Source: Aplysia californica (taxonomy: Eukaryota). From it: a stretch of DNA of 63,312 bases. Shown piece after piece: positions 40,563 to 58,624 of this stretch. The notes under the pieces were generated by a model, which did not search any database, was not told where the DNA came from, and saw only the letters and a program-made list of their open reading frames with translations. The DNA is taken from positions 131,911-195,222 of the forward strand of contig NW_004798019.1 of assembly GCF_000002075.1 (NCBI RefSeq). Direction: 5' to 3'. Both the position numbers and the translations under genes were made by a program. Position 1 is the first letter of the stretch, and each line of letters opens with the position of its first letter.

Positions 40563-42767
40563 TCACAATCTTCTTCTTTTCATCTTTGGCCGGCCTGATG
40601 GACTCCTCAGAGGGTTATCCGCAATCTGTTCTGTCTGTTTTATTAAAGAAGGGGTCTTTTTGGGGGACACACTGTCTCGCTTCATCAACTGTCTCTGTGT
40701 TTGTTCACAAAAGAAATTGTACATTTCAGTCACAGCAAGTTCTAAACCATCAGAAGAGATTCGCTCGAGGCACTGGTGAAGAAAGTCAGCCGCAAAGTCA
40801 GTCGTCACAGCATCACTGATGACGAGGTTGATGAAGGAAAGGTTTGGTGGGGAGGAGTTCGTTGAAGAAGACAATGAAAGCTCGGCCAGGAATATCAGCA
40901 ACGAGTTGAGGAAGGCCCGTACACACACTCCTGCCGGGAAAATATCTGTAAATATACATAAAATAAAGTGAGCTTTTAAAACCATCTAGAAAGTAGAAAG
41001 CTAAAACCTTAAACAGACTCAAAGAGAAGAGTTTGTGAAGACTCAATACAGTATTTTTGGAACCATTTATTTCTACTAAAGAACCATAATCTTTGGCCTA
41101 GAACACCCTCTTTTAAATTTATTTTACACAATAACAGTGAAAAAAAAAGCTCTCCCAGAATTTCCTGAATTCATGCCATTGGATAAGCATGACTTGGTGG
41201 ACCTGCACCTTGCATGTCTCTTTCTGAGTCAAGTAGAACATGACTTAAAGGGTAATACCTCTAAAAGGTGAGCAAATTTCATATATATATATATATATAT
41301 AAAAATGCATAATCTTTTGTTTGCTTGCCCAATACAATGATTTTATTCAAGAAGCTCCTCTACTCTCATTAACAATTTCTTTCCATTTTAGCTCTTGAAC
41401 CGTAACACTGTAACTCCTTTCACCGAAGGAGAATTATAGGGTGTAAAAAGTGCAATAAGAGTAAAACTGTTCTTAACTGGTACATTATTATTATTATTGA
41501 CCCATTTCTTGTAATAATACCATACTAAAACATATAAAAGTAGATTTCTGATTGGTAATTGCACCCAAGCAGGCATGATTTCCCGGCATTACCTCATCTA
41601 GCAGACCAAACTAGTCGAATAACTGTTCATAGGTTTTCATTCATCTTTTAGTTTAAATTTTAGTATGAGTTTTATGGCACTGTAACACAACTAGGTCACA
41701 TCAAGTTAGAAGTGTTGCTAAAGGGTAACATACAAAGGAAAGATGAACACGATAGATGTTTGACAGGAAAGAAGGAGCAAGCTACACCAGATCATCTGCC
41801 AACCACCCGCCATCCCTCTTACAAAAATTACAACTTTAGCTCATAGCAAGTCACCAACCTTGGCCAATCAAGGGAAAAGACACACTGCGAAGGCTGAGCC
41901 TTTCATTGGTGAACCGGAGGCAGTTGGCGTAGACCTCTAGCAAAGCATGGATGCCACGCTCCTCGTCATCGTAAAGCTCTGCCTCCTCGGGAGTGGTAAC
42001 ATGCAGAATTGTCTCCACACAGCTGTCAAATTTACCACCAGCTGGGGTGAGAAGGACATCAGGGGCCTCCAAAGAACCTCCTGTTGGTGAAAGATAAGAT
42101 AGAACACATATAAGTAACCTCATTATTTATCCATGCCATTAGTTGTTTTCTTTACTTAAGAGTTTTACATCACTTGCAATACAAACAGTACATGTAAGTG
42201 ACGAAGATTAGAAGAGTTACCAAAGAGTAAAATACAAAAAAAAAAGAAAGATAAAAACTGCAGAATTTGATAGGAAAGACGAAGCAAACCACACCAGAGC
42301 ACCTGCCAACCACCCACCCATGTCATTTCCCCTTTCAAGAATAAGGGTAAAATTATAAGGCAATAAAGTTAGTAAAAACACCTTGAAAAAGTATGGAAAA
42401 CAATTTGTTAAGGACTGAAACCAGTATGAAGACATTATCTCACTCACTGAAGAGAAGCACGTCAACATGACAGCAGTCAATTAGAGCAGGGAAAAACAAG
42501 ACGGACAAAGCAACATATAAGGTAAAAAAAAGTAGCTCATACTAGTGATGCCATGAGACCACCCACTTTACCTTTCGTCTCGAGATAATCTTTACAAGCC
42601 GTTCTCATGAGAGTGCCGCCCTTGCTAGCAATGTTCTGGCTGCACTCAGTGATGGAGTGGCTCAGAGCTCCGTCAGTCCAGTTGACTATGCCAGTTGTCA
42701 GCTGCTCCGATATGTCGCCCATGCACACGGAAACCTCTAGAAAGTTCGCCAGCCTAAAGTGGAGCAC
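40563..42767 (-). CDS. Macrodomain-encoding exons (42572-42767, 41859-42080, 40563-40945)
   Basis: Motif order GDI / IVN / TxAG / ILH / Y..CL / SVSFPLIG is typical of the macro (A1pp) fold. Splice sites are canonical. Confidence 0.75.
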
Positions 42768-45700
42768 CTGGAAAACACAAAAGGTTCTGTTGTTAGTACT
42801 TATGTACAAGTATACAGGGAGAATGAAAGAGAAAAAAAAAGAGGAAGGGGGTGAGAGTAAAAAAAGAGAGAGAGTGAGAGAGAAAGAGTGAGAGAGAGAA
42901 ATAAACAGCAAGAGAGCAAGAGAGAGAGAGAGACAGAGAGAAACAGATAGAAACAGACAGAGATAGAGAGGATTAGAGGCAATGACAGACAGGAGAGAAG
43001 GAGAGAGGGAACAGGAAAAAAGATTTATCGGACATGCACTATTGATAAAAATGTGTGGCTTTGATGACTGAATGACTGCAAAAAATATAAATAAACAGCA
43101 TCACCTGAAGATGATGCAATTGTGTCTAATTTATACAGGATTATTCTTAGCACATGTGCCTCTTAAAGCGAGTGAATGCAATATAAAACCCTTCTTCAAA
43201 GAGGATGGAATAAAAAAACAACAACCCAACTTATAAGATAATCCAGGTAAAAACAAGGATTATTGGAGACCTCATGTCTCAATTCAACACAACATCAGCT
43301 GAGCTGTCTGAGAACCCTCATTAATTTGCAGATCAAAATTAATTAACCAAAACCAGTAGTATAATGACAGGACCCGAGCCATCCATAGCCAGTTACTTAA
43401 CCAAGATGAACATGTTGAAGAGTCACTCAAGTGAAATTTATCTCTCATTCTAATTCTCATTCTAATGTGGAGTGCGCTGTCCAGGAAACTGTCAACAGTT
43501 GAGCATGGATAATCCCATTACTAGGGCGACTGACTAATGCGTTTGACACATTCATAATTCCGGTTAATTGATGATGAAAAATTAAAAGAGATATCTGCTG
43601 GGGACAGGCAAATTGTACGACGAGCTATCAATGATTGAGTTTTAGGTGTTTGTGTCATCTGTGCCCAACAATACTTTGTGTTGCGTGCTACGCCGAAAAC
43701 AACAAAAACAAATGAACCCAGCACCCAGATGTTTTGTACCTCATATAGAGATGTTTGAGGCAGCAGCTCTACAAGATCCGCTGACTGATCATCTGCACTA
43801 TCCAAAGTCTGTGTACCAGTGGAATGTACGGTTGGCTCTCTGCGGTAATTACGCAGGGAGATTCTGTTTGTCGATACTGAGGACACAACACAAATATAAG
43901 GATTAAAAATGTTTCAAAATACTAGTCTTGTATTGTAAGGAAAGTAAAGTGAAAATGACCACTGAATCAACAATTCTATTTTGATTAAAATAAAACTTTC
44001 ACATCAGATGCTTAATTAAAAACAATAAAACTATTTCTCTATAAAGTCACCTTCCCTACAAAATCTCCAAGTCTCATAACAAACATGGCATGAGTCATGA
44101 GAGTTGATGTTTTAGACTTTGTTATCATATGCCATCACCACACGACATACAATGTAGGCCCATGTCTCAAACTCACATTACCCACAGGCTGCTGCAAGTA
44201 GTCTAGGTGAGCCTGGGCTTCATCAAGCATTCCACAAAAAAACAAGAAATATAACTCTGATCCGTCCTTCTCAATCTAAATTGACTGTATTTCAGAATAT
44301 GGACGGTTGTTCAGAACAATGGCTTCTCCTTGCTGCCAGAGACCTGGCAGTGATTCCTCTGGCATAGCTCAGCCACATTTGGCTTGAGTGAGGAAGCAAG
44401 TGAGAGCCTCAATATGACTTGAAGATTCTTTTTATCAGTAAGTTTTGACCTGCACTTTGACTTATGGTGAAGAAGAGCTTTCAAACAATTTTTTGCTACT
44501 GAAAATGCACATGGTACACTTGAACATCCTAAAATGCTAAGGAAAATGAGGGAAAAAATACTCTCAAAATTGATAGAGCTTGGGGCGTACTAACATTAAA
44601 CTTTGATGTTAATAAGGGGCAGCAAAATATTGTCCTGCATGCCTCAATTGGCCCGCAGGCTGCAAGTTCGAGACGCCTATTGTAGACCAATACACCACAA
44701 ACATTTTGTCTGCTATGATGGAACACAATTTACTATGACAAGCCAATTTATACGGGAGTATTTAAGGAAAAAAAAAATTCCATCTTGGGAAAGTAAGATA
44801 TAAGGTGAGCCTGGATGAAAGACAGTGGGATCACAGGTGCAGAATACTGTATTTCAGTGCTAAATAAAACAAAGTCCACAATCTCCTCATCCAGTGTTGA
44901 CCAAGCAGCAGACAAAAATAGAATGGTTTGGCCAAGACTTCTAAACTCAGAGGCAGTATTGCTAAATTTAAAATGACAATGTCTTTCTCTCTGTGCCTTT
45001 TTCACCCTGAATTGTGTATAAACCGCCAAGAAAGGCTTTTTACTTGGTCTCTGTTCTGAGACATCTTCTCTACCCCCAGCCCGATGTGTCCCATCTGTTT
45101 GAGATCTACTTCCAGATCTCAAAAAACGACAATGTTGCCACTGAAAATGAATCAGACTTCAACCTCAATGAACTTACTCCTTGGGCTGCTCCAGCTTGGC
45201 AAGGACAATCGTTGACCAGGTCCAATGCTGCCAGCTGCCATCTCTCTGCTAGAATGATAAAGTTGAGTGGGTTGTCCTGATCTCGTGTCTCTTAAAAGTG
45301 AAGGCTGTTTGTTTTGGAAAAAACTTGAAGAAAGACTCGATGAATGATGTGCTGGCAGAGTTGACAGCCCTCGTTTATGTGTTGCCCCAGATGACAGTAA
45401 TCGTTGTTTTATACTGCCCATGTTTTCAAACAAAGTTGGGCTTTTAGTAGACGATGAATTTACTTTTGAGAAAAAAGTTTTAATATTATCCCCAATATTT
45501 TTTCGTTTGGACCAAAAGTTCTTAAAACGCTCAGCAGCTGATCGACCAGTCCTCTTCCCTGTCAGAATTGTGCGGGGCTGCTCATTGGACGGATAAGGAA
45601 AAGCAAGAAAACTCTGAGCACCAGTTTCCACTTCCATATCAGTCTCCAGACAACTGTCCTCTCCAGGTGCTTGGTCCTCAGTCCTCTCTCGCTTTTGACC

Positions 45701-47938
45701 CCGACTCCCACTATTGCTGTTATTCTTATCCTTCATTTGGCTGGGCGGTATCAGCACCAAGTCACGCAGTGGAGATGGTGGCAGCTTCTGCTCCTCAGAC
45801 ACTGAGAAATAGCCATCAGCTTCTGAATTTGACCCATCACTGGTCACTGGGCTTGAGACGATGAGGCCTTTACGGGACCTTGTTGTGCTGTAAGCAGAAC
45901 TATTCACAAGGTTTGAAACATTTCCTTCCCTTGTTTCCATCTGTGTTTCTTGGAGTGGTTTTGAAAAAGCAGAATTTTTCGTTCGCAGGTTCACCGTGAG
46001 ATTGGGGAACTTGGGCAAGGAGGGCTGTTCTGACTGTTGAGAAGATTCTGTTGAGACAGATGATGATGCTGCATTATTCGCGAGACTCACGTGCTGCCTC
46101 AGCGGTACAATCTTACCATGTACGTTTCTAATTCCTTGATCCCCCATTTTTGAAGAGTTTAATAAATTTATTTCTTGATGATCACCATCTTCCCTGGACG
46201 AAGCATTTACATCAGAAGCAATGACTGATTCTGGTGGCAGACTTTCACTGTCTGCATTTTCATCTTTGGAAATTTTTGGCGATAGTTTTTTTCCAGATAA
46301 CTCTCTCGCACCTTCTAATGATGAAAAGACAGCATAATTTTTTCTCTCACTCTCAGAAACAAAAGCATTAACCTCACTGTCTGTTGTTTGATTGCTTATC
46401 ATTGCTGCTGAAGACGCAGACTTAACACTGTTCACCTCTTCATCAGCAACACTTGAAGGTCGGTGGTACGGAGGATTGTACGCTCCAATCCGAAGTCTTT
46501 TGATTCTGCTGGGAAAGGTCTCAGAATATTGATCAGTATTTCGTGACACTGCCCCAGATCGAGTTCGACGTGAAGTCCCAAAATCTTCCTCTTCTGGATT
46601 CTTGCTATGACTAGGACTCCTAACATTTAACTCCCTTTTACCATCACGGGGTGAATGGGACAAGCGTTTGTGACTTAACCGTGACCTTTTATTACGGTTC
46701 TGCTGCGCATCCGAAAGTTCATCACTGTCTGACGTCTCAGGTTGTCTCTGTCTCGAAGAGGGCTTGTCACTATGTCGCCTTTTCCCAATGTCAGGCATTG
46801 GGCTTTTCTCCTCACTTTGACAACTGCTCGCTTCACTAGAACCACATGACTGTCTTTTCTCGCTACCATCTTCACAACTCTCATCACTGTCAGCTGTCTT
46901 AGAACTGCCTGACCACCTCTTCTTCTTTTTGGGTAGCTGAGACTCAGTCGAACTGTTAAGATCTTGAACTCTGTCCTGTCCCTGACCTCTTTTCCTTTTT
47001 GTTTCTGGACTCTTTTTGATGTATCTGCCCTTCTTACTGAATCTTTTGCTGCCTTCAGACTCCGACTCATCAGAATCTGACGAGTCAATGATGCCAAGAC
47101 GCTGGCGGCTCTGCTGGCTACTACGGGTAGCTCTCCTTGTCACAGGAACAGTAACCCTTGTATTTTCTACTACCCTCATTGTCCCTCTTTGTGCTTTTCT
47201 TTTGCCTGCTTGTGCGGCTAAAATAAGAGAAGCGGTTTGAGATTCACCAGTACCAGTCAGTGGGGAGAAAATTGGTTTAAAAGGAGAAACTTTGTCTTGG
47301 GAACTGGAGGTTTGTCTCCCAGGAGTATTTTGTTCTGAGATTTGATTTGTGCTCGCTGTCCTAAGTCTCTGGGACTGGCGCGTTCTTGGTGTGGCAGCCC
47401 TACTCCCATCACTGTCCTGTGTTACTGATAAACTCTGGGAAGATTCCAGCTCAGGTCCGATGCTGTCCTGGTCATGATCCACGCTGACACTGCACTGACC
47501 GCAGGACCTGGTGGACCTGAGGGGTCTCCCTCCTCGAGGAGTTACTTTATCAGGGACGTGCGGGACCACAAACTCTCCTTCCTCAATACTCTCTACACTT
47601 AGGCTAACATCAGGTGATTCTCCATCATCAGCTTGGTGAAGGCTTCTATCATCAATGTTGTCGTCGGAATCATCAGAAAAGTCTTCTCCCGATGACGACT
47701 CTGGTCGTGTCCGGGGCGGTGTGATACTTCCAACACTGTCGCCTTCCTCTGCACTGAAAAATTCGTCATCACTGAGAATTCCAGAAGAAATATGTGGAGG
47801 TGGTATGGCGCCTGTGACAGAAGTGCCTGCAGCTATGGGAGCATTAATTTGAGCCTCGCGGAGGACATCCTCATGAAAAGTGTACCTTGGACTTTCTTCT
47901 CCATCTGAGTCTGGGCTCTGAGACTGATTGTTTCCCAT
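40563..47938 (-). CDS. Uncharacterised ~1232-aa protein: long disordered Ser/Arg/Lys/acidic N-terminus plus a divergent C-terminal macrodomain
   Basis: Coding exons (minus): 45178-47938 (acceptor upstream at 47964; donor AGG A|GTAAGT), 43740-43876, 42572-42767, 41859-42080, 40563-40945. Phases 1,0,1,1 are consistent; total 3699 nt. The last three exons give macro-fold motifs: EVSVCMGDISEQLTTGIVNWTD, LTPAGGKFDSCVETILHVTTP, VYANCLRFT, LRSVSFPLIGQDIFP, LSFINLV. Confidence 0.8.
45178..47938 (-). CDS. Giant first coding exon (920 codons) encoding a disordered region with an N-myristoylation motif and basic NLS-like clusters
   Basis: A 928-aa ORF rich in S/R/K/E/D that starts MGNNQS and contains PETKRKR and PKKKKRW. 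Confidence 0.85.
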
Positions 47939-51229: not shown

Positions 51230-53958
51230 CTTCACCTTCACCTATCCCATAGACTGGATGTCCGTCAGGGCGCTTTTGAAGATTTGGCCACCAGCTTCCT
51301 CCACTCCTTCCGGTCTTACAGCTTTCTGATGGTGTCTTTGAGTTCCAGGCCTGTCCATTCCCTGATGTTGTCCTCCCAACTCTTCTTCGGTCTGCCTCTG
51401 CTCCTTTTTCCCTACTGCCTTGCAGGATCATCTTGGCAAGGCCGGATGAACGGGTGATGTGTCCATACCATTGCAGTTTGCGTTTTGTGACCAGAGAAGG
51501 TCAGCATGCATGGTCCAATTTCAATTTTGATCAATTGTTTGACTTCGTTATTTGTGATGTGATCTTTGTGTATAAAATACCAAGGATTTTTTGGAGGCAT
51601 CTTATCTTCACAGACTTAGCTTTGATCCTTCTTTCAAGGTCTGCTTTCAAGGTAGGGATTTACATGCTTACAAAAATACTGACATGACTAGGGAATGCAT
51701 CTCTGTGTCTGATCTTTGGTCTGATGGGGATACTTCTGTTGTTCCAGATAGTGTTCAACTTGGTCATTGCTGCTCTGAAGTTTGCGCTATTCTTGAGATT
51801 ATTTCTGGTTTTGTGATCCTTCATCTGTCACTATTGCACCCAGGTATTTGAAGCTGTGTACGGTCTCAAGCCTCTGGTTGTTGACCTGGATGCCTACTGT
51901 GATGTTCTTGTTGCTGTTGGACATCAGTTTGGTCTTCTCAGCGCTGATTTCCATGCTGTAGGCTGTGGAGGTCTTTTCAAGACGGTCTATTAAGCTGACT
52001 AGTTCTTGCTCTTGTCCTGCAAGGCCGTCTATGTCGTCTGCAAAACATAAGTTATTAATCGTTCTGCCCCCAATACTGACTGTTCTTTCGTGATCTTCAA
52101 GTGCAGCTGTCGTGATCCTCTCTAAGAAAATGCTGAAAAGAGTGAGTGGGAGCAGACAACCCTGGCATACTCCCACTGTTGTTCGGAACCATTCCCCAAT
52201 GTTGTTGTTGAAAAAGACTGCGCTCGTAGCTTTCTTAGCTTTTCTATGACTTTTTGATCAGGTTGGCGTTGATGTTGTATAGCTTTTCTATGACTTTGAT
52301 CGGGTTGGGGGTCTGTCGAGAATGACTTTAAGCATTACTATAGTAGGATGGCTAATCAGGCTAATAGTACGATAGTTTTGGGATTGTTGAAGATTGCCTT
52401 TCTTGGGAAGGGTGATGATCAAGGATTGAGTCCATGGTGTTGGCCATTCACCTGTCTGCCAGATCTTGTTGCAGATTATCCATAGCATGTCTATCACCGC
52501 GTGTCTACCTGCTTGAACTATTTCTGCTGCTATCATTGTGACACAGGGCTTCTTTTTCATGCGATGTTTCTCAAGGAGCTCATTTGCTGTTTCTGTCATG
52601 GCGGTGTTGGAGGTGTTTATCAGGGAGTCAACTTCTGTATCATCTCGATTTAGCGCTAGGAGTGGAGCAAACTTTTCTCCTTTGTTTGCTTGAAAACATT
52701 CTAATATATGGTTGAGTCTTTGAGTCTTTCAAGGTTGAACTTGATCTGTGTGTTGCCTTGTTTCCTGCCTTTTTTTAAAGATGCATTGAAAATGTCAACA
52801 TGACAAGATTGTGGTCACTGCCGATGTCTGCACCTGGAAAACTTCTGGTCTTGGCAATGTTGACACTGCTTTGAAAGTGATGCTTGACTACGATGTAGTC
52901 TATCTGATGTAAATCTCCGCTTGGGCTGCACCATGCCAAATTATGCAAAAATTATGCAAGTTACCGTAACACTATTCGCGACATGTTTTGCACTTTTTCA
53001 ACACGAATTTTCATGATTTTCATGTTTTATGTACAGAAAAATTTAAAACAGAACATATCAGTATCAGTAATTTGTTGTGTATTTGGAAAGAAAACAATAC
53101 ACATCTGTACAAAAAAAAAAAAAACCCCCAAAAATCTAATCATAATCTCTGTAACTTTCAGCTGTAGATCTAGATCTAGATCTATAGAGGAAAGAAAAAT
53201 GTAAAAAAAAAAAAAGAAGGACATCTGGACCTCTGATGCTGGCACATTACTAAAACCAGGAACACCTGTCAAACATGAAACCTGTCAAACATGAAACATC
53301 AGCAGACATGAGGAACAACTTTTGATGGATTGCAAAATTGAACATGCTCAAAGAACAAAATCTCAACCCATAACCAAGATCTTCTAACAAGGGAAATAAC
53401 CAACTTTTCATGTAACTGAGACCTATTGCGGTAATTATTTCCCTTTAGTCACATGGCGAGGCGTTAATTAATTGTTTTGTGAAAAAAAGGTAAAAAACGT
53501 GAAAAAACGCGGGGAATCCAAAATTATGCAAATATTGCAGAATTACGCGAAAAAACGCGGCCGCACAATCGCATAATCCTACGGGGACAGATCGCAGTAG
53601 GCTCCGCAGATTCCTTCCCAGTCTTTCGCTGCAGTTTCCCTGATCTTAGCATTCCAGTCACCCTGTACCACAATGATATCCTTCTTTGGTGTTTTGTCCA
53701 GTACTTCTTGGAGTTGGGTGTAGAAATCCTCCACTTCTTCGTCATCATTTCATGTGCTGTTGTTGGTGCATATGCTTGGATGACACTGATGTTGAATGGT
53801 AATGCTTTCAAGCGTATGTATGGCCGTGAGTCGACAGGAAACTAGTCGGCAACCCAAGACCGTTCACTGTGTCTTTATGAATGAGTATTCCAATTCCATA
53901 TTCATGGCGGTCTTCTCTGCCACTGTAGTATAGTTTATGCCCTCCTGGGGTTGATGTA
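51230..53958 (-). mobile_element. Decayed RTE-clade non-LTR retrotransposon (endonuclease and RT fragments)
   Basis: Fragments: YYSGREDRHEYGIGILIHK and NISVIQAYAPT (APE endonuclease); IWQTGEWPTPWTQSLIITLPKKGNL..NYRTISLISH; GVCQGCLLPLTLF; NNLCFADDIDGLAG; FKYLGAIVTDEGS. The 3' tail is (GTGAAG)n near 51230-51243. Many stops and frameshifts. Confidence 0.9.
52935..53590. mobile_element. Non-autonomous DNA-element fragment inserted into the RTE
   Basis: Non-RTE AT-rich block interrupting the endonuclease region, with AAATTATGCA subterminal repeats near both ends. The right end reads CGCATAATCCTACGGGGACAG; no matching left TIR is seen. Confidence 0.5.
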
Positions 53959-55077
53959 TAAAATAGAAATAGGAGGGTGGTCGCATATCTTTTATAGGAT
54001 TTTTTATTGTAATGGAGAACTCTGCTTCTAAGCATTGTGATAGCGAGTTTGACTTTCTAATTTTAACTCCTCTGCTTGCTGAATTATTTTTTGGCGGAGA
54101 ATTGTTTCATAACATATCATTGACTTTCACTATGATCTTTGTGACTGGTGTCTTTTGTCTAGTAGCTTTAAAAGTGCTTTGCTTTTGCATGCAGATGACC
54201 TGAGTTCAATTCCATTGAATGGAGAATTTTGCTTTTTTTTACCTTGAACATCTCTGACTTCCTGCTGGGACTCTGTATTCCCCTCAGTCCAGATTGACAA
54301 ATCATAAATGAATATTACCCCCCGGGGCAGTGCTACTGACTGAAATGTCTTTAGGCCATTCCCAAAGGGGGGACATTAACATGTTATTATGCAAAGTAGA
54401 ATGTAAACGGGCTGATTGATCAATGTCATGTTCATACTGTGCCAGAACAACATCGGGGGAACTGTTGCTTTTTATTTCCTCATCCTAACTATCATAATTT
54501 TTCCTCTTCTTCTTTTGTATGTTTGTCAATCTCTTGTGAACTGCTATAATTTCTTGGGTACCTTGATTGGCGAAGGCGTCTTATTGCTGTTAAGTAAGCC
54601 TAACTCCCCGTTTAGACTTCTCTGTGGACATCCACCCCTTGGCGCTCATTGGACCTTATGCAGTTGCGAGCGGCGTAAAACCTCAACTAAAACAAACAGC
54701 ATAAATAAATAAATATTGACCTTCACAGAGTTGAAGCCAAACTCCTTAATGATGGAAATAGGGGTATAATCTGAAAAAAAAGTAGTCTCTATGTATGCTG
54801 CCTTTATCATTGGCCTACCTATTCTTTGTTGTGGTTTCCTTTACAGTCTCTACTTATGCACATCATTCAATTTACAAAGACGTGCTCCGCTCAAATGCAC
54901 ATTTTTATGTATTTTGTTTTTTACAGAACAGTTAAATTTAATCTGTTCCAGGTCCATCACCTCTATGTTAGACTTCTTCATGCTCTGAATTGACTAACGC
55001 TGCAAAAAAAAATTACTTGAATGATTTACTATTTCTCTTTCCAGCTAATCAAGTGAGAATTTGAGAGGGTAGCCACC

Positions 55078-57996
55078 ATGGAGTACCACTGCTCGGACCA
55101 GCCTGATGAGAAAGAAGACAGCAATATGGCAGACTTAGCAATCTCTGTGTTATCTAATGCAATTGAGACGCTGATACAGGGGAATGAGTTAGTAAACTTT
55201 TCAGCTTCCCCTTTAGGCTGTTTCAAAAACAGGCAGAATGCCAACACTGTTGAAAACACGAGAAAATATTACATGGCACCGGCTGGGCAAACTGTCAGTC
55301 ACGTAGAACAGAGAGATGCTGAAGAAAGGGGATCAACTCAGCCATTAGAAAAGTTGACAAATACACATCCGCTTTGGGGTCAGGTGTCTGGAGAAGGGAA
55401 AGTGAAAGCTACAGGTGTTGACAAACCTCGAAAAAGATCATGCTTAGGACCTGAGAATTGGAAACGGGTCAAAGCGAAGCGGTTGCGTGAACATGGTGAA
55501 GCTTATGAGGGCAGGTCAAAAAATAAAATGACAGGAAAATCAGAGCCCAAATATGTTGCTGAAAAGAAAATGGGTTGTAGATGTTCCTGTGCATCCGACC
55601 ACAGGAGTTACAAATGTGCCAGCTTTAGTGAGGAGGAAAGACAAGAAATTTTCCAACTCGTTTGGTCAATGACAGAAGCTGACAGGAAAATCTGGGTTTT
55701 TGAAATGGTTAATGCTTTGTCCATCAAGCAAAGAACTGTGTTTCATGACTCGCGTAGGTCGAATACTTTAGCTTACAATTTCAAGAGAAATGGAGAGAGA
55801 CTAAGAGTCTGCAAGACTTTCTTCTTACGAACAACTGGATTGCGTCAGTGGTGGGTTCGACAACGCGCATTGAAAATGCAGAATGATGAATCTTCTGTAG
55901 CTAAAAAGCCCTCTTCTGCCAGTTCACGATTTGAAGAAGAGAGGAAATTTTGTAAGGATTTTTTGCAAAAGCTGCCTTTTGTGTCGTCCCATCCTTCGAG
56001 CAAGGCATCTTCGTCAAAGCGTTTTCTAGACCCAACTTTTGTGACATTTGCAGATGTGTATAGACTCTACAAAAGATCATGTTTTTATAGCAACAAAAAG
56101 ATTCTTTGTCGTCAAGTAGTGCGCAAAATATTTGAGGACTTGAATTTGTCAATTTTTAGCCCCAAGAAAGAGCAGACTGACGCTTATGTTGCACATGATC
56201 AGGATTCTATGTTCATTCCAAGAGAGGAAAAGGACCTAACTGATCCTTATTTTATGGAACCTGAAGAAGTGGACGAATCAATGGATATAGATGCTGAACA
56301 TGAAATGTTAGTAGACGATGAACCAGTACAGCCTTCGGCAGTTTCCGAGACAAATTCACAGAACACAGAAACTGAAGAAGATAGTGCAGTAGAAAGTTCA
56401 ACTAGTGAAAGCACATTTTGGGTCCAAGGGACTGGAGAAGGAACAGTTTTGGGTTTTGATAGGCCACGAAAAAGAAAAGCTTCAAAACCTGAAAACTGGA
56501 AAAAGGTGAAAGCAAGGAAACAGCGGGAACATGGGGAAGCGTATGAGGGTAGGTCAAAGAATAAGATGACTGGAAAGTTAGAGCCAAAATACATTAGGGA
56601 AAAAACACTGGGCCCTAGGTGTCCCTGCATGCCGGATCACAAGAGCAACAAATGTGCTGATTTTAGTGAGGAGGAGAGACAAGAAATTTTCAGACTTGTG
56701 TGGTCAATGACTGAGTTGCAGAGGAGATTGTGGGTCTCTGAAGTGGTTAATGCTGTATCCATCAAACAGAGGACCGTGTTTCACGACTCTCGTAGGACAA
56801 ACACATTGGTTTATAACTTCAAGAGAAATGGAGAGAGACTTAGAGTCTGCAAGACTTTCTTCTTGGAAACAACTGGTCTACGTCAGTGGTGGGTTCGGAA
56901 CTGGGTGTTGAATTTACCAGACCCTGATACTTTAACGATACGAAGACCTTCCTTTGCCCCACAGAGGTTTAAAGAGGATAGACAATTTTGTGAGGACTTT
57001 CTTCAGAAGCTGCCGTGTGTGCCATCTCATTATTCAGGGACTTCAATGTCAAAGCATTATCTTGAACCAACCTTTCGGACATATGCAGATGTGTACAGAC
57101 TCTATAAAAAAGCATGTTCTGAAAACAATAAAAAGGTGCTGTGTCGTCAAGTAGTCCACAACGTATTTGAGGATTTGAATTTAGCCATCTCTCGTCAGGG
57201 GAAAGACAGCAATGACACATATGTTTCTCATGAACCAGACAGTATGTTTATATCAATGGAGAAAAAGAACTATTCTGGTGGTTGTTTTGAGGAAGCTGAG
57301 GCTCAAGACTCATTATTAGATGAAAGTGAAAAACTCATATTAGAGGATGGCCCAGAGCACCGGTTGGTAGCTTCAGGGACAAATCCCAGAAATGTTAAAC
57401 ACGGAGACAAAATAATGGAGAGACTAGCGTGTCAAAATTCTCATTGGATTCAATCATCTGGAGAAGGGACATTGGATATTGATGGATTACGAGACACAGG
57501 ACTCTCAGAGGCTGAAATGTACAAAAACTGGAAAAGGAAGAATGGGGCAACTGTGTGGAGTCACGAGAAAGCTCATGGGGGTAGTTCAATATCACGGAAG
57601 CGAAAACTTGAGCAGAAAGAAATAGACAGAAGAATTTTAGGCGCGAGGTGTTCCTGTACGTTTGATCACAAAACGAACAGATGTGCCAGCTTTAGTGAGG
57701 AGGAACGACAAGAAGTCTTTAAACTCGTTTGGTCAATGACCGAAGCACAGAGGTCAATCTGGGTCTCTGAAGTGGTGAGTGCGATGAGCATCAAGCAAAG
57801 AGCAGCGTTCCCGGACTCGCGGCGGACTAACACAATAGCTTACTTCTTCAAGAGAAATGGGGAGAGAGTGAGAGTCTGCAAGAATTTCTTCTTGCAAACT
57901 ACTGCCTTGCGTCAATGGTGGGTTCGGCAAAGGGCGTTGAAAGTTCAGGACGATGGTCTGTCAGCGGCAGAGAGGTCAATGTTGCAGAGTCTGTGA
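55078..57996 (+). CDS. 972-aa protein with three tandem Cys-rich modules resembling the N-terminal half of Sola1-type transposases; no catalytic domain (probable domesticated transposase derivative)
   Basis: Uninterrupted ORF with perfect Kozak GCCACCATGG (55072-55081) and acceptor tttctctttccag at 55044. Repeats start near 55375, 56419 and 57445, each reading W..xGEG...NWKR/K...RCxCxxDHxxxxC..FSEEERQExFxLVWSMT...SRRxNTxxYxFKRNGERxRVCKxFFLxTTxLRQWWVR. Confidence 0.85.
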   Translation: MEYHCSDQPDEKEDSNMADLAISVLSNAIETLIQGNELVNFSASPLGCFKNRQNANTVENTRKYYMAPAGQTVSHVEQRDAEERGSTQPLEKLTNTHPLWGQVSGEGKVKATGVDKPRKRSCLGPENWKRVKAKRLREHGEAYEGRSKNKMTGKSEPKYVAEKKMGCRCSCASDHRSYKCASFSEEERQEIFQLVWSMTEADRKIWVFEMVNALSIKQRTVFHDSRRSNTLAYNFKRNGERLRVCKTFFLRTTGLRQWWVRQRALKMQNDESSVAKKPSSASSRFEEERKFCKDFLQKLPFVSSHPSSKASSSKRFLDPTFVTFADVYRLYKRSCFYSNKKILCRQVVRKIFEDLNLSIFSPKKEQTDAYVAHDQDSMFIPREEKDLTDPYFMEPEEVDESMDIDAEHEMLVDDEPVQPSAVSETNSQNTETEEDSAVESSTSESTFWVQGTGEGTVLGFDRPRKRKASKPENWKKVKARKQREHGEAYEGRSKNKMTGKLEPKYIREKTLGPRCPCMPDHKSNKCADFSEEERQEIFRLVWSMTELQRRLWVSEVVNAVSIKQRTVFHDSRRTNTLVYNFKRNGERLRVCKTFFLETTGLRQWWVRNWVLNLPDPDTLTIRRPSFAPQRFKEDRQFCEDFLQKLPCVPSHYSGTSMSKHYLEPTFRTYADVYRLYKKACSENNKKVLCRQVVHNVFEDLNLAISRQGKDSNDTYVSHEPDSMFISMEKKNYSGGCFEEAEAQDSLLDESEKLILEDGPEHRLVASGTNPRNVKHGDKIMERLACQNSHWIQSSGEGTLDIDGLRDTGLSEAEMYKNWKRKNGATVWSHEKAHGGSSISRKRKLEQKEIDRRILGARCSCTFDHKTNRCASFSEEERQEVFKLVWSMTEAQRSIWVSEVVSAMSIKQRAAFPDSRRTNTIAYFFKRNGERVRVCKNFFLQTTALRQWWVRQRALKVQDDGLSAAERSMLQSL

Positions 57997-58624
57997 TCGT
58001 CATAGGAAACATACTTTTTTAAAAGAAAACTGCATAAAGTATAAAGTTATTCCACTTTTTGGCACATGCTCACTTGGAAATCATCATTGATACAACTGAC
58101 CACNNNNNNNNNNNNNNNNNNNNNNNNNNNNNNNNNNNNNNNNNNNNNNNNNNNNNNNNNNNNNNNNNNNNNNNNNNNNNNNNNNNNNNNNNNNNNNNNN
58201 NNNNNNNNNNNNNNNNNNNNNNNNNNNNNNNNNNNNNNNNNNNNNNNNNNNNNNNNNNNNNNNNNNNNNNNNNNNNNNNNNNNNNNNNNNNNNNNNNNNN
58301 NCTTTTTTAATGATCCGTTTGTCACAGCAGTACTACAGTAGTTTACAGTTTATAGTACCGATACAGAAAAACGAAAAGTTTGTCACCTATTCAGAACTTT
58401 CTTTGTTTGGTATTCATGCATTGTTTTTCTGTTTTACATATGCAGTCTTTTATAGTAATTTGTGTTGGATTAATTTGTGCTCCTCTCCTCTTAATGTGTA
58501 TGAGTGGGTGGTTGGCGGGTGCTCTTTGTAGTCTGCTCTTTTTTTCCTATCTAACATCTACACCTACATCGTCCTTTATCTCTTTTCCTTCTTTTTTGAG
58601 TTTGTTACTCTTTTGTTGCGCACG

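What the first reader, a model, noticed from the sequence alone, without database searches (positions are those of the whole stretch)
55078..57996. Probable domesticated Sola-type transposase gene made of three tandem Cys-rich N-terminal modules with no catalytic core
Seen: an intact 972-aa ORF with a perfect Kozak site and an upstream splice acceptor, so it is wired into a spliced host transcript, and I see no flanking TIRs. It contains three ~345-aa modules (the third truncated) separated by acidic linkers. Each module has NWKR/K..., RCxCxxDHxxxxC, FSEEERQExFxLVWSM, SRRxNTxxY and RVCKxFFLxTT; modules 1 and 2 also have SH..S...L.P and Y.LYK...FEDLNL. Recalled, not searched: this motif series matches the N-terminal half of Sola1-type DNA transposases, which continue into PKKDxCxxC and a DDD core. 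Here that motif is eroded (PKKEQTDAY, QGKDSNDTY) and the core is absent from all three modules. Inference: a host gene that multiplied a transposase DNA-binding/Zn module, possibly a multivalent transcription factor or a repressor of cognate transposons. I know of no characterised protein with this architecture.
Basis: partly seen in the sequence, partly recalled or inferred. Interest (0 to 1): 0.85.

Follow-up and report, generated by a model that had tools for sequence, protein, structure and literature searches.

The report
Core-less Sola1 transposase module array gene
A single-copy sea-hare (Aplysia californica) gene encodes three tandem copies of the front, probably DNA-binding, half of a Sola1 transposase and no cutting domain; selection has kept it intact, and similar arrays turn up in many other animals, which points to an undescribed class of transposon-derived regulators.

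Summary
Window 55078-57996 (+) is an intact 972-aa ORF with the layout N-tail, A1-B1, acidic linker, A2-B2, acidic linker, A3.

The Sola1 assignment is supported indirectly. A profile of the module finds 11,364 protein clusters. The typical hit carries one module followed by KKDxCxxC and an RNase H-like core. That core matches, block by block, the Sola1-1_AP core printed in Majorek 2014.

The ORF has no core, and none lies within the window or 10 kb upstream and 20 kb downstream of it. The ORF is single-copy at DNA level and I found no flanking inverted repeats.

The modules diverged under purifying selection (dS about 1.2; omega 0.11 in domain A, 0.56 in the linkers). All family-invariant domain-A residues are kept. 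The Cys/His cluster next to the lost core is gone.

Domestication is therefore probable, not proven.

The architecture is not unique. Core-less arrays of domain A recur in gastropods, mosquitoes, fish, a sea urchin and beetles. Two other Aplysia arrays are conserved unit by unit in other genomes, one of them in named snail and slug genera. The scan earlier noted a parallel FLYWCH array in this genome (s1-716525).

The parts
55024..55044 (+). Pyrimidine tract plus AG: candidate 3' splice site for a 5'-UTR intron (use untested)
   Evidence: Sequence read. Stops in all three frames between 55045 and the ATG.
55072..55081 (+). Start context gccaccATGG
55078..57996 (+). Complete single-exon CDS, 972 aa plus TGA
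   Evidence: The same 972-aa protein is on record in the protein collection (P0001).
55078..55425 (+). Acidic N-terminal tail (aa 1-116, pI 5.0). It aligns weakly with the disordered N-terminal region of full-length relatives.
55426..55875 (+). Domain A1 (aa 117-266): basic, Cys-rich; PRKR, NWKR, RCSCASDHRSYKC, FSEEERQE, RVCKTFF
   Evidence: Model pLDDT mostly above 90.
55894..56157 (+). Domain B1 (aa 273-360): winged-helix-like
   Evidence: VIA-align Z 6.8, 68 residues, rmsd 2.8 to a cullin WHB domain.
56161..56187 (+). Eroded KKDxCxxC motif 1 (PKKEQTDAY)
56188..56463 (+). Acidic linker 1 (the linker segment aa 361-462 has pI 4.1)
   Evidence: Linker omega is 0.56.
56464..56913 (+). Domain A2 (aa 463-612)
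56941..57192 (+). Domain B2 (aa 622-705)
57196..57222 (+). Eroded KKDxCxxC motif 2 (QGKDSNDTY)
57223..57495 (+). Acidic linker 2 (the linker segment aa 706-806 has pI 4.7)
57496..57942 (+). Domain A3 (aa 807-955). The Cys set and core residues are kept. The first helix has diverged (K243, R246, G249, Y252 equivalents changed).
57943..57996 (+). Short tail and stop. No domain B3 follows.

Best explanation
This is a single-exon, single-copy gene of Aplysia californica. It descends from a Sola1 DNA transposon and now encodes only the pre-catalytic half of the transposase, triplicated in tandem.

Each module has two domains. Domain A is about 145 aa, strongly basic and Cys-rich; four Cys conserved across the family probably hold a zinc ion. 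Domain B is about 88 aa and winged-helix-like. The third module is domain A only. Acidic, probably disordered, linkers separate the modules.

The RNase H-like DDD core and the KKDxCxxC...H cluster that precedes it are gone, so the protein cannot cut or join DNA.

The most likely function (inferred) is a nuclear, multivalent, sequence-specific DNA-binding protein. It would act as a transcriptional regulator, or as a repressor that occupies Sola1-type terminal sequences. The three binding modules would read a long or repeated target. The acidic linkers would serve as effector or autoinhibitory segments.

Shown here: the anatomy, descent from Sola1-type proteins, absence of a core, single-copy status, and purifying selection since the internal duplications.

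Inferred only: zinc binding, DNA binding, nuclear location (PRKR/PRKRK motifs), host-level rather than transposon-level benefit, and splicing of a 5' UTR.
For: Anatomy and motifs.

Family:
- The profile search gives 11,364 clusters at E<=1e-3.
- 97 of the 157 proteins examined have one A domain plus a core.
- 34 of 38 full-length relatives hit DUF7869.
- The core of a relative models as an RNase H-like fold nearest integrases and IstA.
- The core blocks match Sola1-1_AP (PMC3985635 Suppl. File 3, against the consensus).

No core here.

Single copy: the only other DNA matches are to two SINE-like repeats upstream. The best protein-level paralogue is only 40% identical.

Selection:
- dS is 1.1-1.3 between modules.
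- Omega is 0.11 for A1 vs A2, 0.25 for comparisons with A3, 0.24 for B and 0.56 for the linkers.
- Neutral change of only 5% would give about 9 stops.
- C278, C286, C351, R294, W302 and T358 equivalents are kept in all three modules, while C416, C475, C478 and H494 equivalents are lost together.

Fold: the module model has mean pLDDT 86.4. Domain B is winged-helix-like. Domains have pI around 10.

Precedent:
- Other core-less arrays in this genome have unit-by-unit orthologues. One has them in Physella (52% over 955 aa), Plakobranchus and Elysia. Another has one in an unnamed ENA assembly.
- Core-less arrays also occur in mosquitoes, wrasses, a sea urchin and beetles.

Presence: the stretch is present in 19 runs from 6 studies. 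Many are only about 100 million letters, too small for genomic coverage of a 927-Mb genome, which hints at RNA.
Against: - No orthologue of this particular gene was found. In a 5.8-billion-protein collection, the only hit besides the window's own protein is a remote 28% match in a bacterial MAG, and the N-terminal 250 aa find nothing.
- The only other label that holds it, organism B, is about 99% identical and may be the same or a sibling species.
The holder runs are only guessed to be RNA.
- Sola1 families in this genome are low-copy anyway. The closest full-length element has just two copies, so single-copy status is weaker evidence than usual.
- Selection between modules could have acted at transposon level before the core was lost.
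- Domain A has no recognised fold, and the domain B matches (Z below 8) are in the range the tool calls common.
- A masked N run begins 108 nt after the stop.
Confidence: 0.6

Rival explanations
1. It is a transposon-borne ORF and no host gene. One version is the remnant of a multi-A Sola1 transposase that recently lost its last B domain and core. The other is a non-autonomous Sola1 derivative whose truncated protein regulates transposition for the element's own benefit, like the KP repressor of P elements.
For: - Sola1-type transposases with two or three A domains plus an intact core exist (P0003/C185, P0018, P0022, P0026, P0131).
- Sola1 families in this genome are low-copy.
- No orthologue was found.
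- The nearest unit in the tree is a core-bearing transposase (P0090).
Against: - No core or B3 remnant within the window, 10 kb upstream or 20 kb downstream.
- No TIRs and no second copy, not even a decayed one, above 40% protein identity.
- KKDxCxxC is eroded in both internal modules while the domain A and B residues are kept.
- The whole 2.9-kb frame stayed open through dS of about 1.2.
Confidence: 0.28
2. It is a neutral relic: a dead transposon fragment whose frame is open by chance.
For: No direct expression data were obtained here.
Against: - The simulation gives about 9 stops at 5% neutral change, and no stop-free outcome in 2,000 trials at 5%, 10% or 17%.
- Omega is 0.11-0.25 in domain A against 0.56 in the linkers.
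- All invariant domain-A residues are retained three times over.
Confidence: 0.02
3. The module belongs to a family other than Sola1, and the Sola1 likeness is superficial.
For: No Repbase or Dfam Sola1 sequence could be searched directly. The comparison with Sola1-1_AP was block by block and by eye. The ORF itself has no core to classify.
Against: Five consecutive core blocks agree with Sola1-1_AP and with its aphid relative. The Sola2 (FTDGCAGQYKN) and Sola3 (SDNASSYHGN) blocks differ. The module is joined to that core in 97 of the 157 proteins examined.
Confidence: 0.05

Closest known systems
Sola1 DNA transposases (Repbase Sola1; clade E.10 of the RNase H-like superfamily in Majorek et al. 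2014, PMC3985635)
   Same: The A-B module is homologous to the region directly upstream of the Sola1-type core. The profile E-value for P0001 is 4.5e-258, and 1,385 clusters score below 1e-30. Full-length relatives carry KKDxCxxC plus the Sola1 core blocks.
   Different: No catalytic core, no KKDxCxxC...H cluster, no TIRs found, single copy, and the module is triplicated.
Pfam DUF7869 (PF25273)
   Same: 34 of 38 full-length relatives match it, and it lies in their RNase H-like core.
   Different: The ORF does not match it at all. No Pfam model covers domain A or domain B.
Host genes built from multiplied transposase DNA-binding domains, such as FLYWCH, BED and THAP arrays (from general knowledge), and the FLYWCH array noted in this genome (s1-716525)
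   Same: The logic is the same: the DNA-binding front end of a transposase is kept, multiplied in tandem and separated from catalysis.
   Different: The source superfamily is different. I found no paper on a Sola1-derived host gene. The repeat unit is much larger (about 145 or about 345 aa) and has no recognised fold.
Conserved heterobranch core-less Sola1 arrays: Aplysia C42 ORF with Physella LOC131958471, Plakobranchus GFO23215 and Elysia GFS20801; Aplysia LOC101854718; Aplysia LOC101856214
   Same: Same domains, no core, same genome. In the first two (C42; LOC101854718 with the unnamed ENA protein P0122), units are orthologous position by position across genomes. For LOC101856214 only relatives of like architecture were seen, in Physella and Elysia.
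   Different: The three units of the window ORF form their own clade (support 0.985). It is therefore an independent, apparently lineage-specific array, with no orthologue found.

Membership tests
Sola1 transposase superfamily | RNase H-like DDD catalytic core with the Sola1 signature blocks | tested here: not met
   Absent from the ORF and from the window, 10 kb upstream and 20 kb downstream. Present in relatives and matching Sola1-1_AP.
Sola1 transposase superfamily | Pre-core N-terminal region homologous to that of core-bearing Sola1-type proteins | tested here: met
   Profile search. 97 of the 157 proteins examined have one A domain plus a core. The window's units are sister to the core-bearing P0090.
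Sola1 transposase superfamily | Terminal inverted repeats and a short target-site duplication | tested here: inconclusive
   No bracketing inverted repeat. With a single copy, element ends cannot be mapped, and the 3' flank is masked from 58104.
Domesticated (host-retained) transposase gene | Immobile, single-copy locus | tested here: met
   No other DNA copy in the 927-Mb assembly. The next protein match is 40% identical. Caveat: Sola1 families here are low-copy.
Domesticated (host-retained) transposase gene | Purifying selection on the coding sequence | tested here: met
   Omega is 0.24-0.36 overall and 0.11 in domain A, at dS of about 1.2 between the internal repeats. Neutral simulation. 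Not tested between orthologues or within a population.
Domesticated (host-retained) transposase gene | Syntenic orthologues in other species | tested here: not met
   No protein above about 40% identity outside this genome. Organism B holds a near-identical copy, about 99%. Other sea-hare genomes could not be searched, so absence is not established.
Domesticated (host-retained) transposase gene | Transcribed and spliced as a host gene | tested here: inconclusive
Small runs hold up to 93% of the words, but their RNA status is a guess.
Pfam DUF7869 | Match to PF25273 at or above the gathering score | tested here: not met
   No hit in the ORF.
Winged-helix DNA-binding fold (domain B) | Structural match over a whole winged-helix domain, well above background | tested here: inconclusive
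   Z 6.8, 68 residues, rmsd 2.8 to a cullin WHB domain. TnsB, RFX, GT-1 and CENP-B follow at Z 4.4-6.2. The tool says Z below 8 is common.

The most novel reading that the evidence does not exclude
Arrays of the Sola1 transposase front-end domain, without the nuclease, are a recurrent and so far undescribed class of transposon-derived multi-domain DNA-binding host proteins. They arose independently many times: in heterobranch gastropods, sabethine mosquitoes, wrasses, a sea urchin and beetles. The window ORF would be a young sea-hare-specific member. It would read long or repeated DNA targets with three modules, either to silence Sola1-type elements or to regulate host genes. This is a large-domain counterpart of zinc-finger arrays, built on a Cys-rich fold that no solved structure yet represents.
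Probability: 0.4. Interest if true: 0.75.

Novelty: new variant of a known kind. Interest (0 to 1): 0.6.

Why it matters
Domesticated transposases are a major source of new transcription factors, yet I found no paper reporting a host gene derived from Sola1.

This locus and its many analogues show the same outcome evolving repeatedly: the catalytic core is discarded and the front end is multiplied. That gives a natural, replicated experiment on how DNA-binding arrays are born.

It also marks domain A for structural and binding studies. Domain A is about 145 aa, Cys-rich, has no Pfam model and matched no solved fold here.

If the arrays bind Sola1 ends, they would be a transposon-derived defence against the same transposons.

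Tried and rejected
- Pfam on the ORF: only noise.
- Word-based homologue searches: the module region gave only the ORF's own protein and a 28% hit in a bacterial MAG. The N-terminal 250 aa gave nothing.
- The look-up of encoding contigs for the exact protein: nothing on record.
Splicing and expression therefore stayed untested. One local script used the whole window file as a tblastn subject, and nothing matched there.
- PDB sequence search with the family profile: noise only.
- Foldseek on the module: no match at E<=0.001.
- ESM Atlas: machine busy twice.
- Yuan and Wessler 2011 was not held. Majorek 2014 supplements were used instead.
- Paper searches for DUF7869 and for Sola-derived domesticated genes found nothing relevant.
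- Inverted-repeat search around the ORF: only short chance pairs.
- Rejected: a fusion with the upstream gene at 40563-47938, because stops lie in all three frames between the acceptor and the ATG.
Full report
**Observation**

Window 55078-57996 (+) is an uninterrupted 972-aa ORF. Self-comparison shows a tandem repeat with a period of about 1044 nt. ORF nt 296-1835 align with nt 1340-2864 at 70% identity, and a third, shorter copy is 79% identical over 310 nt. Protein identity between modules is 54-59%.

The start context is gccaccATGG. A pyrimidine tract plus AG ends at 55044. Stops in all three frames lie between that AG and the ATG, so the ORF is a self-contained coding sequence whatever lies upstream. 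Use of the acceptor was not tested.

**Which genome**

The window is contig C749 (379,758 bases) of a 927-Mb, 4,332-contig assembly. A paralogue on contig C185 is RefSeq LOC101856023 of Aplysia californica, so the organism is the California sea hare.

**What the module is**

Pfam does not recognise the ORF. A six-frame search of the genome with module 1 gave at least 110 matches at 23-40% identity. Many carry stops, which is the picture of an old transposon family. A few lie in long open frames.

A profile of ten modules, searched against 1.84 billion representative proteins, found 11,364 clusters at E<=1e-3. The typical member is about 750 aa. It has a disordered N-terminus, one module, a KKDQCDxC...H cluster, then a C-terminal domain that hits Pfam DUF7869 (34 of 38 full-length members).

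A model of one such protein, P0028, is confident from residue 229 onward. Its C-terminal half is an RNase H-like fold, nearest to IstA, retroviral integrases and TnsB.

The consensus core blocks are TMDLQAVLLxP, YYKTKLxVHNFT, CYxWxExEG, YSDGCxYQNRN and EKGHTQME. They agree one by one with the Sola1-1_AP core printed in Supplementary File 3 of Majorek et al. 2014: FDLEKVLTTPQ, YYKRKFAVYNFT, CYMWDESEG, YSDNCGGQNRN, ERGHTQS. The Sola2 and Sola3 blocks in the same file differ.

The evidence comes through relatives, because the ORF itself has no core.

**Anatomy**

I cut domain HMMs from the full-length alignment. They resolve the ORF as A(123-266)-B(273-360)-A(469-612)-B(622-705)-A(813-955), with no KKDCxxC, core or C-terminal domain.

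tblastn with twelve full-length relatives finds nothing core-like in the 63-kb window, 10 kb upstream or 20 kb downstream.

The A domains have pI 10.3-10.4, the B domains 9.2-9.9 and the linkers 4.1-4.7.

Module 1 models with mean pLDDT 86.4. Domain B resembles winged-helix domains: a cullin WHB domain at Z 6.8 over 68 residues with rmsd 2.8, followed by TnsB, RFX, GT-1 and CENP-B. The tool itself calls this range of Z common.

**Residue retention**

Against 38 full-length Sola1-type proteins, all three modules keep the invariant domain-A residues: the equivalents of C278, C286, C351, R294, W302, V350 and T358. Modules 1 and 2 keep S413, H414, K422, Y439 and C443 of domain B.

Both modules have lost C416, C475, C478 and H494 together. 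My inference is that domain A holds a structural zinc site that is still needed. The lost residues would have formed a second Cys/His site tied to the now-absent core.

**Selection**

Between modules, dS is 1.1-1.3 and omega is 0.24-0.36. By region, omega is 0.11 for A1 vs A2, 0.25 for comparisons with A3, 0.24 for B and 0.56 for the linkers.

In a simulation, 5% neutral change already gives about 9 stops. No stop-free outcome appeared in 2,000 trials at 5%, 10% or 17%. The frame has therefore been held open by selection since the duplications. This agrees with the scan's note s1-763222.

**Mobility**

At DNA level the ORF is unique in the assembly. Only two SINE-like repeats upstream, at 53591-53957 and 54318-54698, are multi-copy. 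No inverted repeat brackets the ORF.

The nearest paralogue is an intact 841-aa Sola1-type transposase ORF on C397, 35-40% identical. That family has only one other copy, at 92% identity. Low copy number is thus normal for Sola1 here, and single-copy status is weaker evidence than usual.

**Expression**

I sent none of those letters to a search tool afterwards. One local script used the whole window file as a tblastn subject.

Indirect evidence comes from the run table. Nineteen runs from six studies hold the stretch, many of them only about 100 million letters. That is too small to cover a given 3.2 kb of a 927-Mb genome as DNA, which hints at RNA, but the tool marks their RNA status as a guess.

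A second species label holds 69-78% of the 31-letter words. That corresponds to about 99% identity and says nothing about deep conservation.

**Orthologues**

None was found. Other sea-hare genomes were out of reach.

**Wider pattern**

The listed hits and their cluster members come to 157 proteins. The ranking favours multi-module proteins, because their scores add up. Of the 157:
- 97 have one A domain plus a core.
- 7 have two or three A domains plus a core.
- 25 have two to nine A domains and no core.

In a domain-A tree, the units of most of these proteins cluster by protein. The window's three units do so with support 0.985 and are sister to the core-bearing P0090. Amplification was therefore repeated and independent.

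Some arrays are old host genes:
- The Aplysia C42 ORF (A-A-B) has unit-by-unit orthologues in Physella (52% identity over 955 aa), Plakobranchus and Elysia.
- LOC101854718 (four A domains) has a unit-by-unit orthologue, P0122, on a contig of an unnamed ENA assembly.
- LOC101856214 (five A domains) has relatives of like architecture in Physella and Elysia, though its units were not resolved position by position.

Arrays also occur in Sabethes, Topomyia and Malaya mosquitoes, Labrus wrasses, Strongylocentrotus, Diabrotica and Nicrophorus.

I found no paper on Sola1-derived host genes. The scan earlier reported a parallel FLYWCH array in this genome (s1-716525, not tested here).

**Verdict**

The structural reading is confirmed, and the Sola1 origin is supported through relatives. 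That the ORF is a host-retained, non-catalytic, multivalent DNA-binding protein is the best explanation, at about 0.6. A transposon-borne truncated protein is the main rival, at about 0.28.

It is a new variant of a known kind. Transposase DNA-binding arrays are known, but a Sola1 source and this large Cys-rich unit are not.

Noticed in passing
G000:C42, locus L024:4735-7848 (-): A 1038-aa core-less A-A-B Sola1-derived ORF. Its two units are orthologous position by position to those of Physella LOC131958471 (52% identity over 955 aa), Plakobranchus GFO23215 and Elysia GFS20801. This looks like a true ancient domesticated gene of heterobranch gastropods.
   Followed up: partly
G000:C195, locus L025:2250-6386 (-), = LOC101854718; also LOC101856214 (P0048, 2520 aa): Two further Aplysia genes with four and five domain-A units and no core. 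The first has a unit-by-unit orthologue (P0122) from an unnamed ENA assembly. The second has relatives of like architecture in Physella (P0080) and Elysia (P0149).
   Followed up: partly
G000:C96, locus L022:5048-8272 (-): A 1075-aa open frame with three nearly identical domain-A units followed by one B domain and no core. This appears to be a very recent internal triplication.
   Followed up: no
G000:C397, locus L021:4123-6645 (-); second copy at C428:564497-568413: An intact 841-aa full-length Sola1-type transposase ORF (A-B-KKDCxxC-core-C-terminal domain). The genome holds only one other copy, 92% identical and carrying a stop. This may be a still-autonomous low-copy Sola1 element.
   Followed up: partly
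window 53591-53957 and 54318-54698: Two different interspersed repeats of about 370 bp (SINE-like), with many genomic copies at 80-88% identity. They lie in the putative intron or promoter region upstream of the ORF.
   Followed up: no
P0006, P0008, P0038, P0007 (Sabethes, Topomyia, Malaya mosquitoes): Annotated mosquito proteins with 4-9 tandem Sola1 domain-A units and no core, forming one clade across three sabethine genera.
   Followed up: no
P0002: A 1074-aa protein labelled as from a Sedimenticola MAG is 28% identical to the module. This is probably animal DNA binned into a bacterial genome.
   Followed up: no
window 58104-58301: A masked or gap N run starts 108 nt after the stop codon. 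No AATAAA or ATTAAA signal lies in the readable 3' flank, so the 3' end of the transcript is unknown.
   Followed up: no
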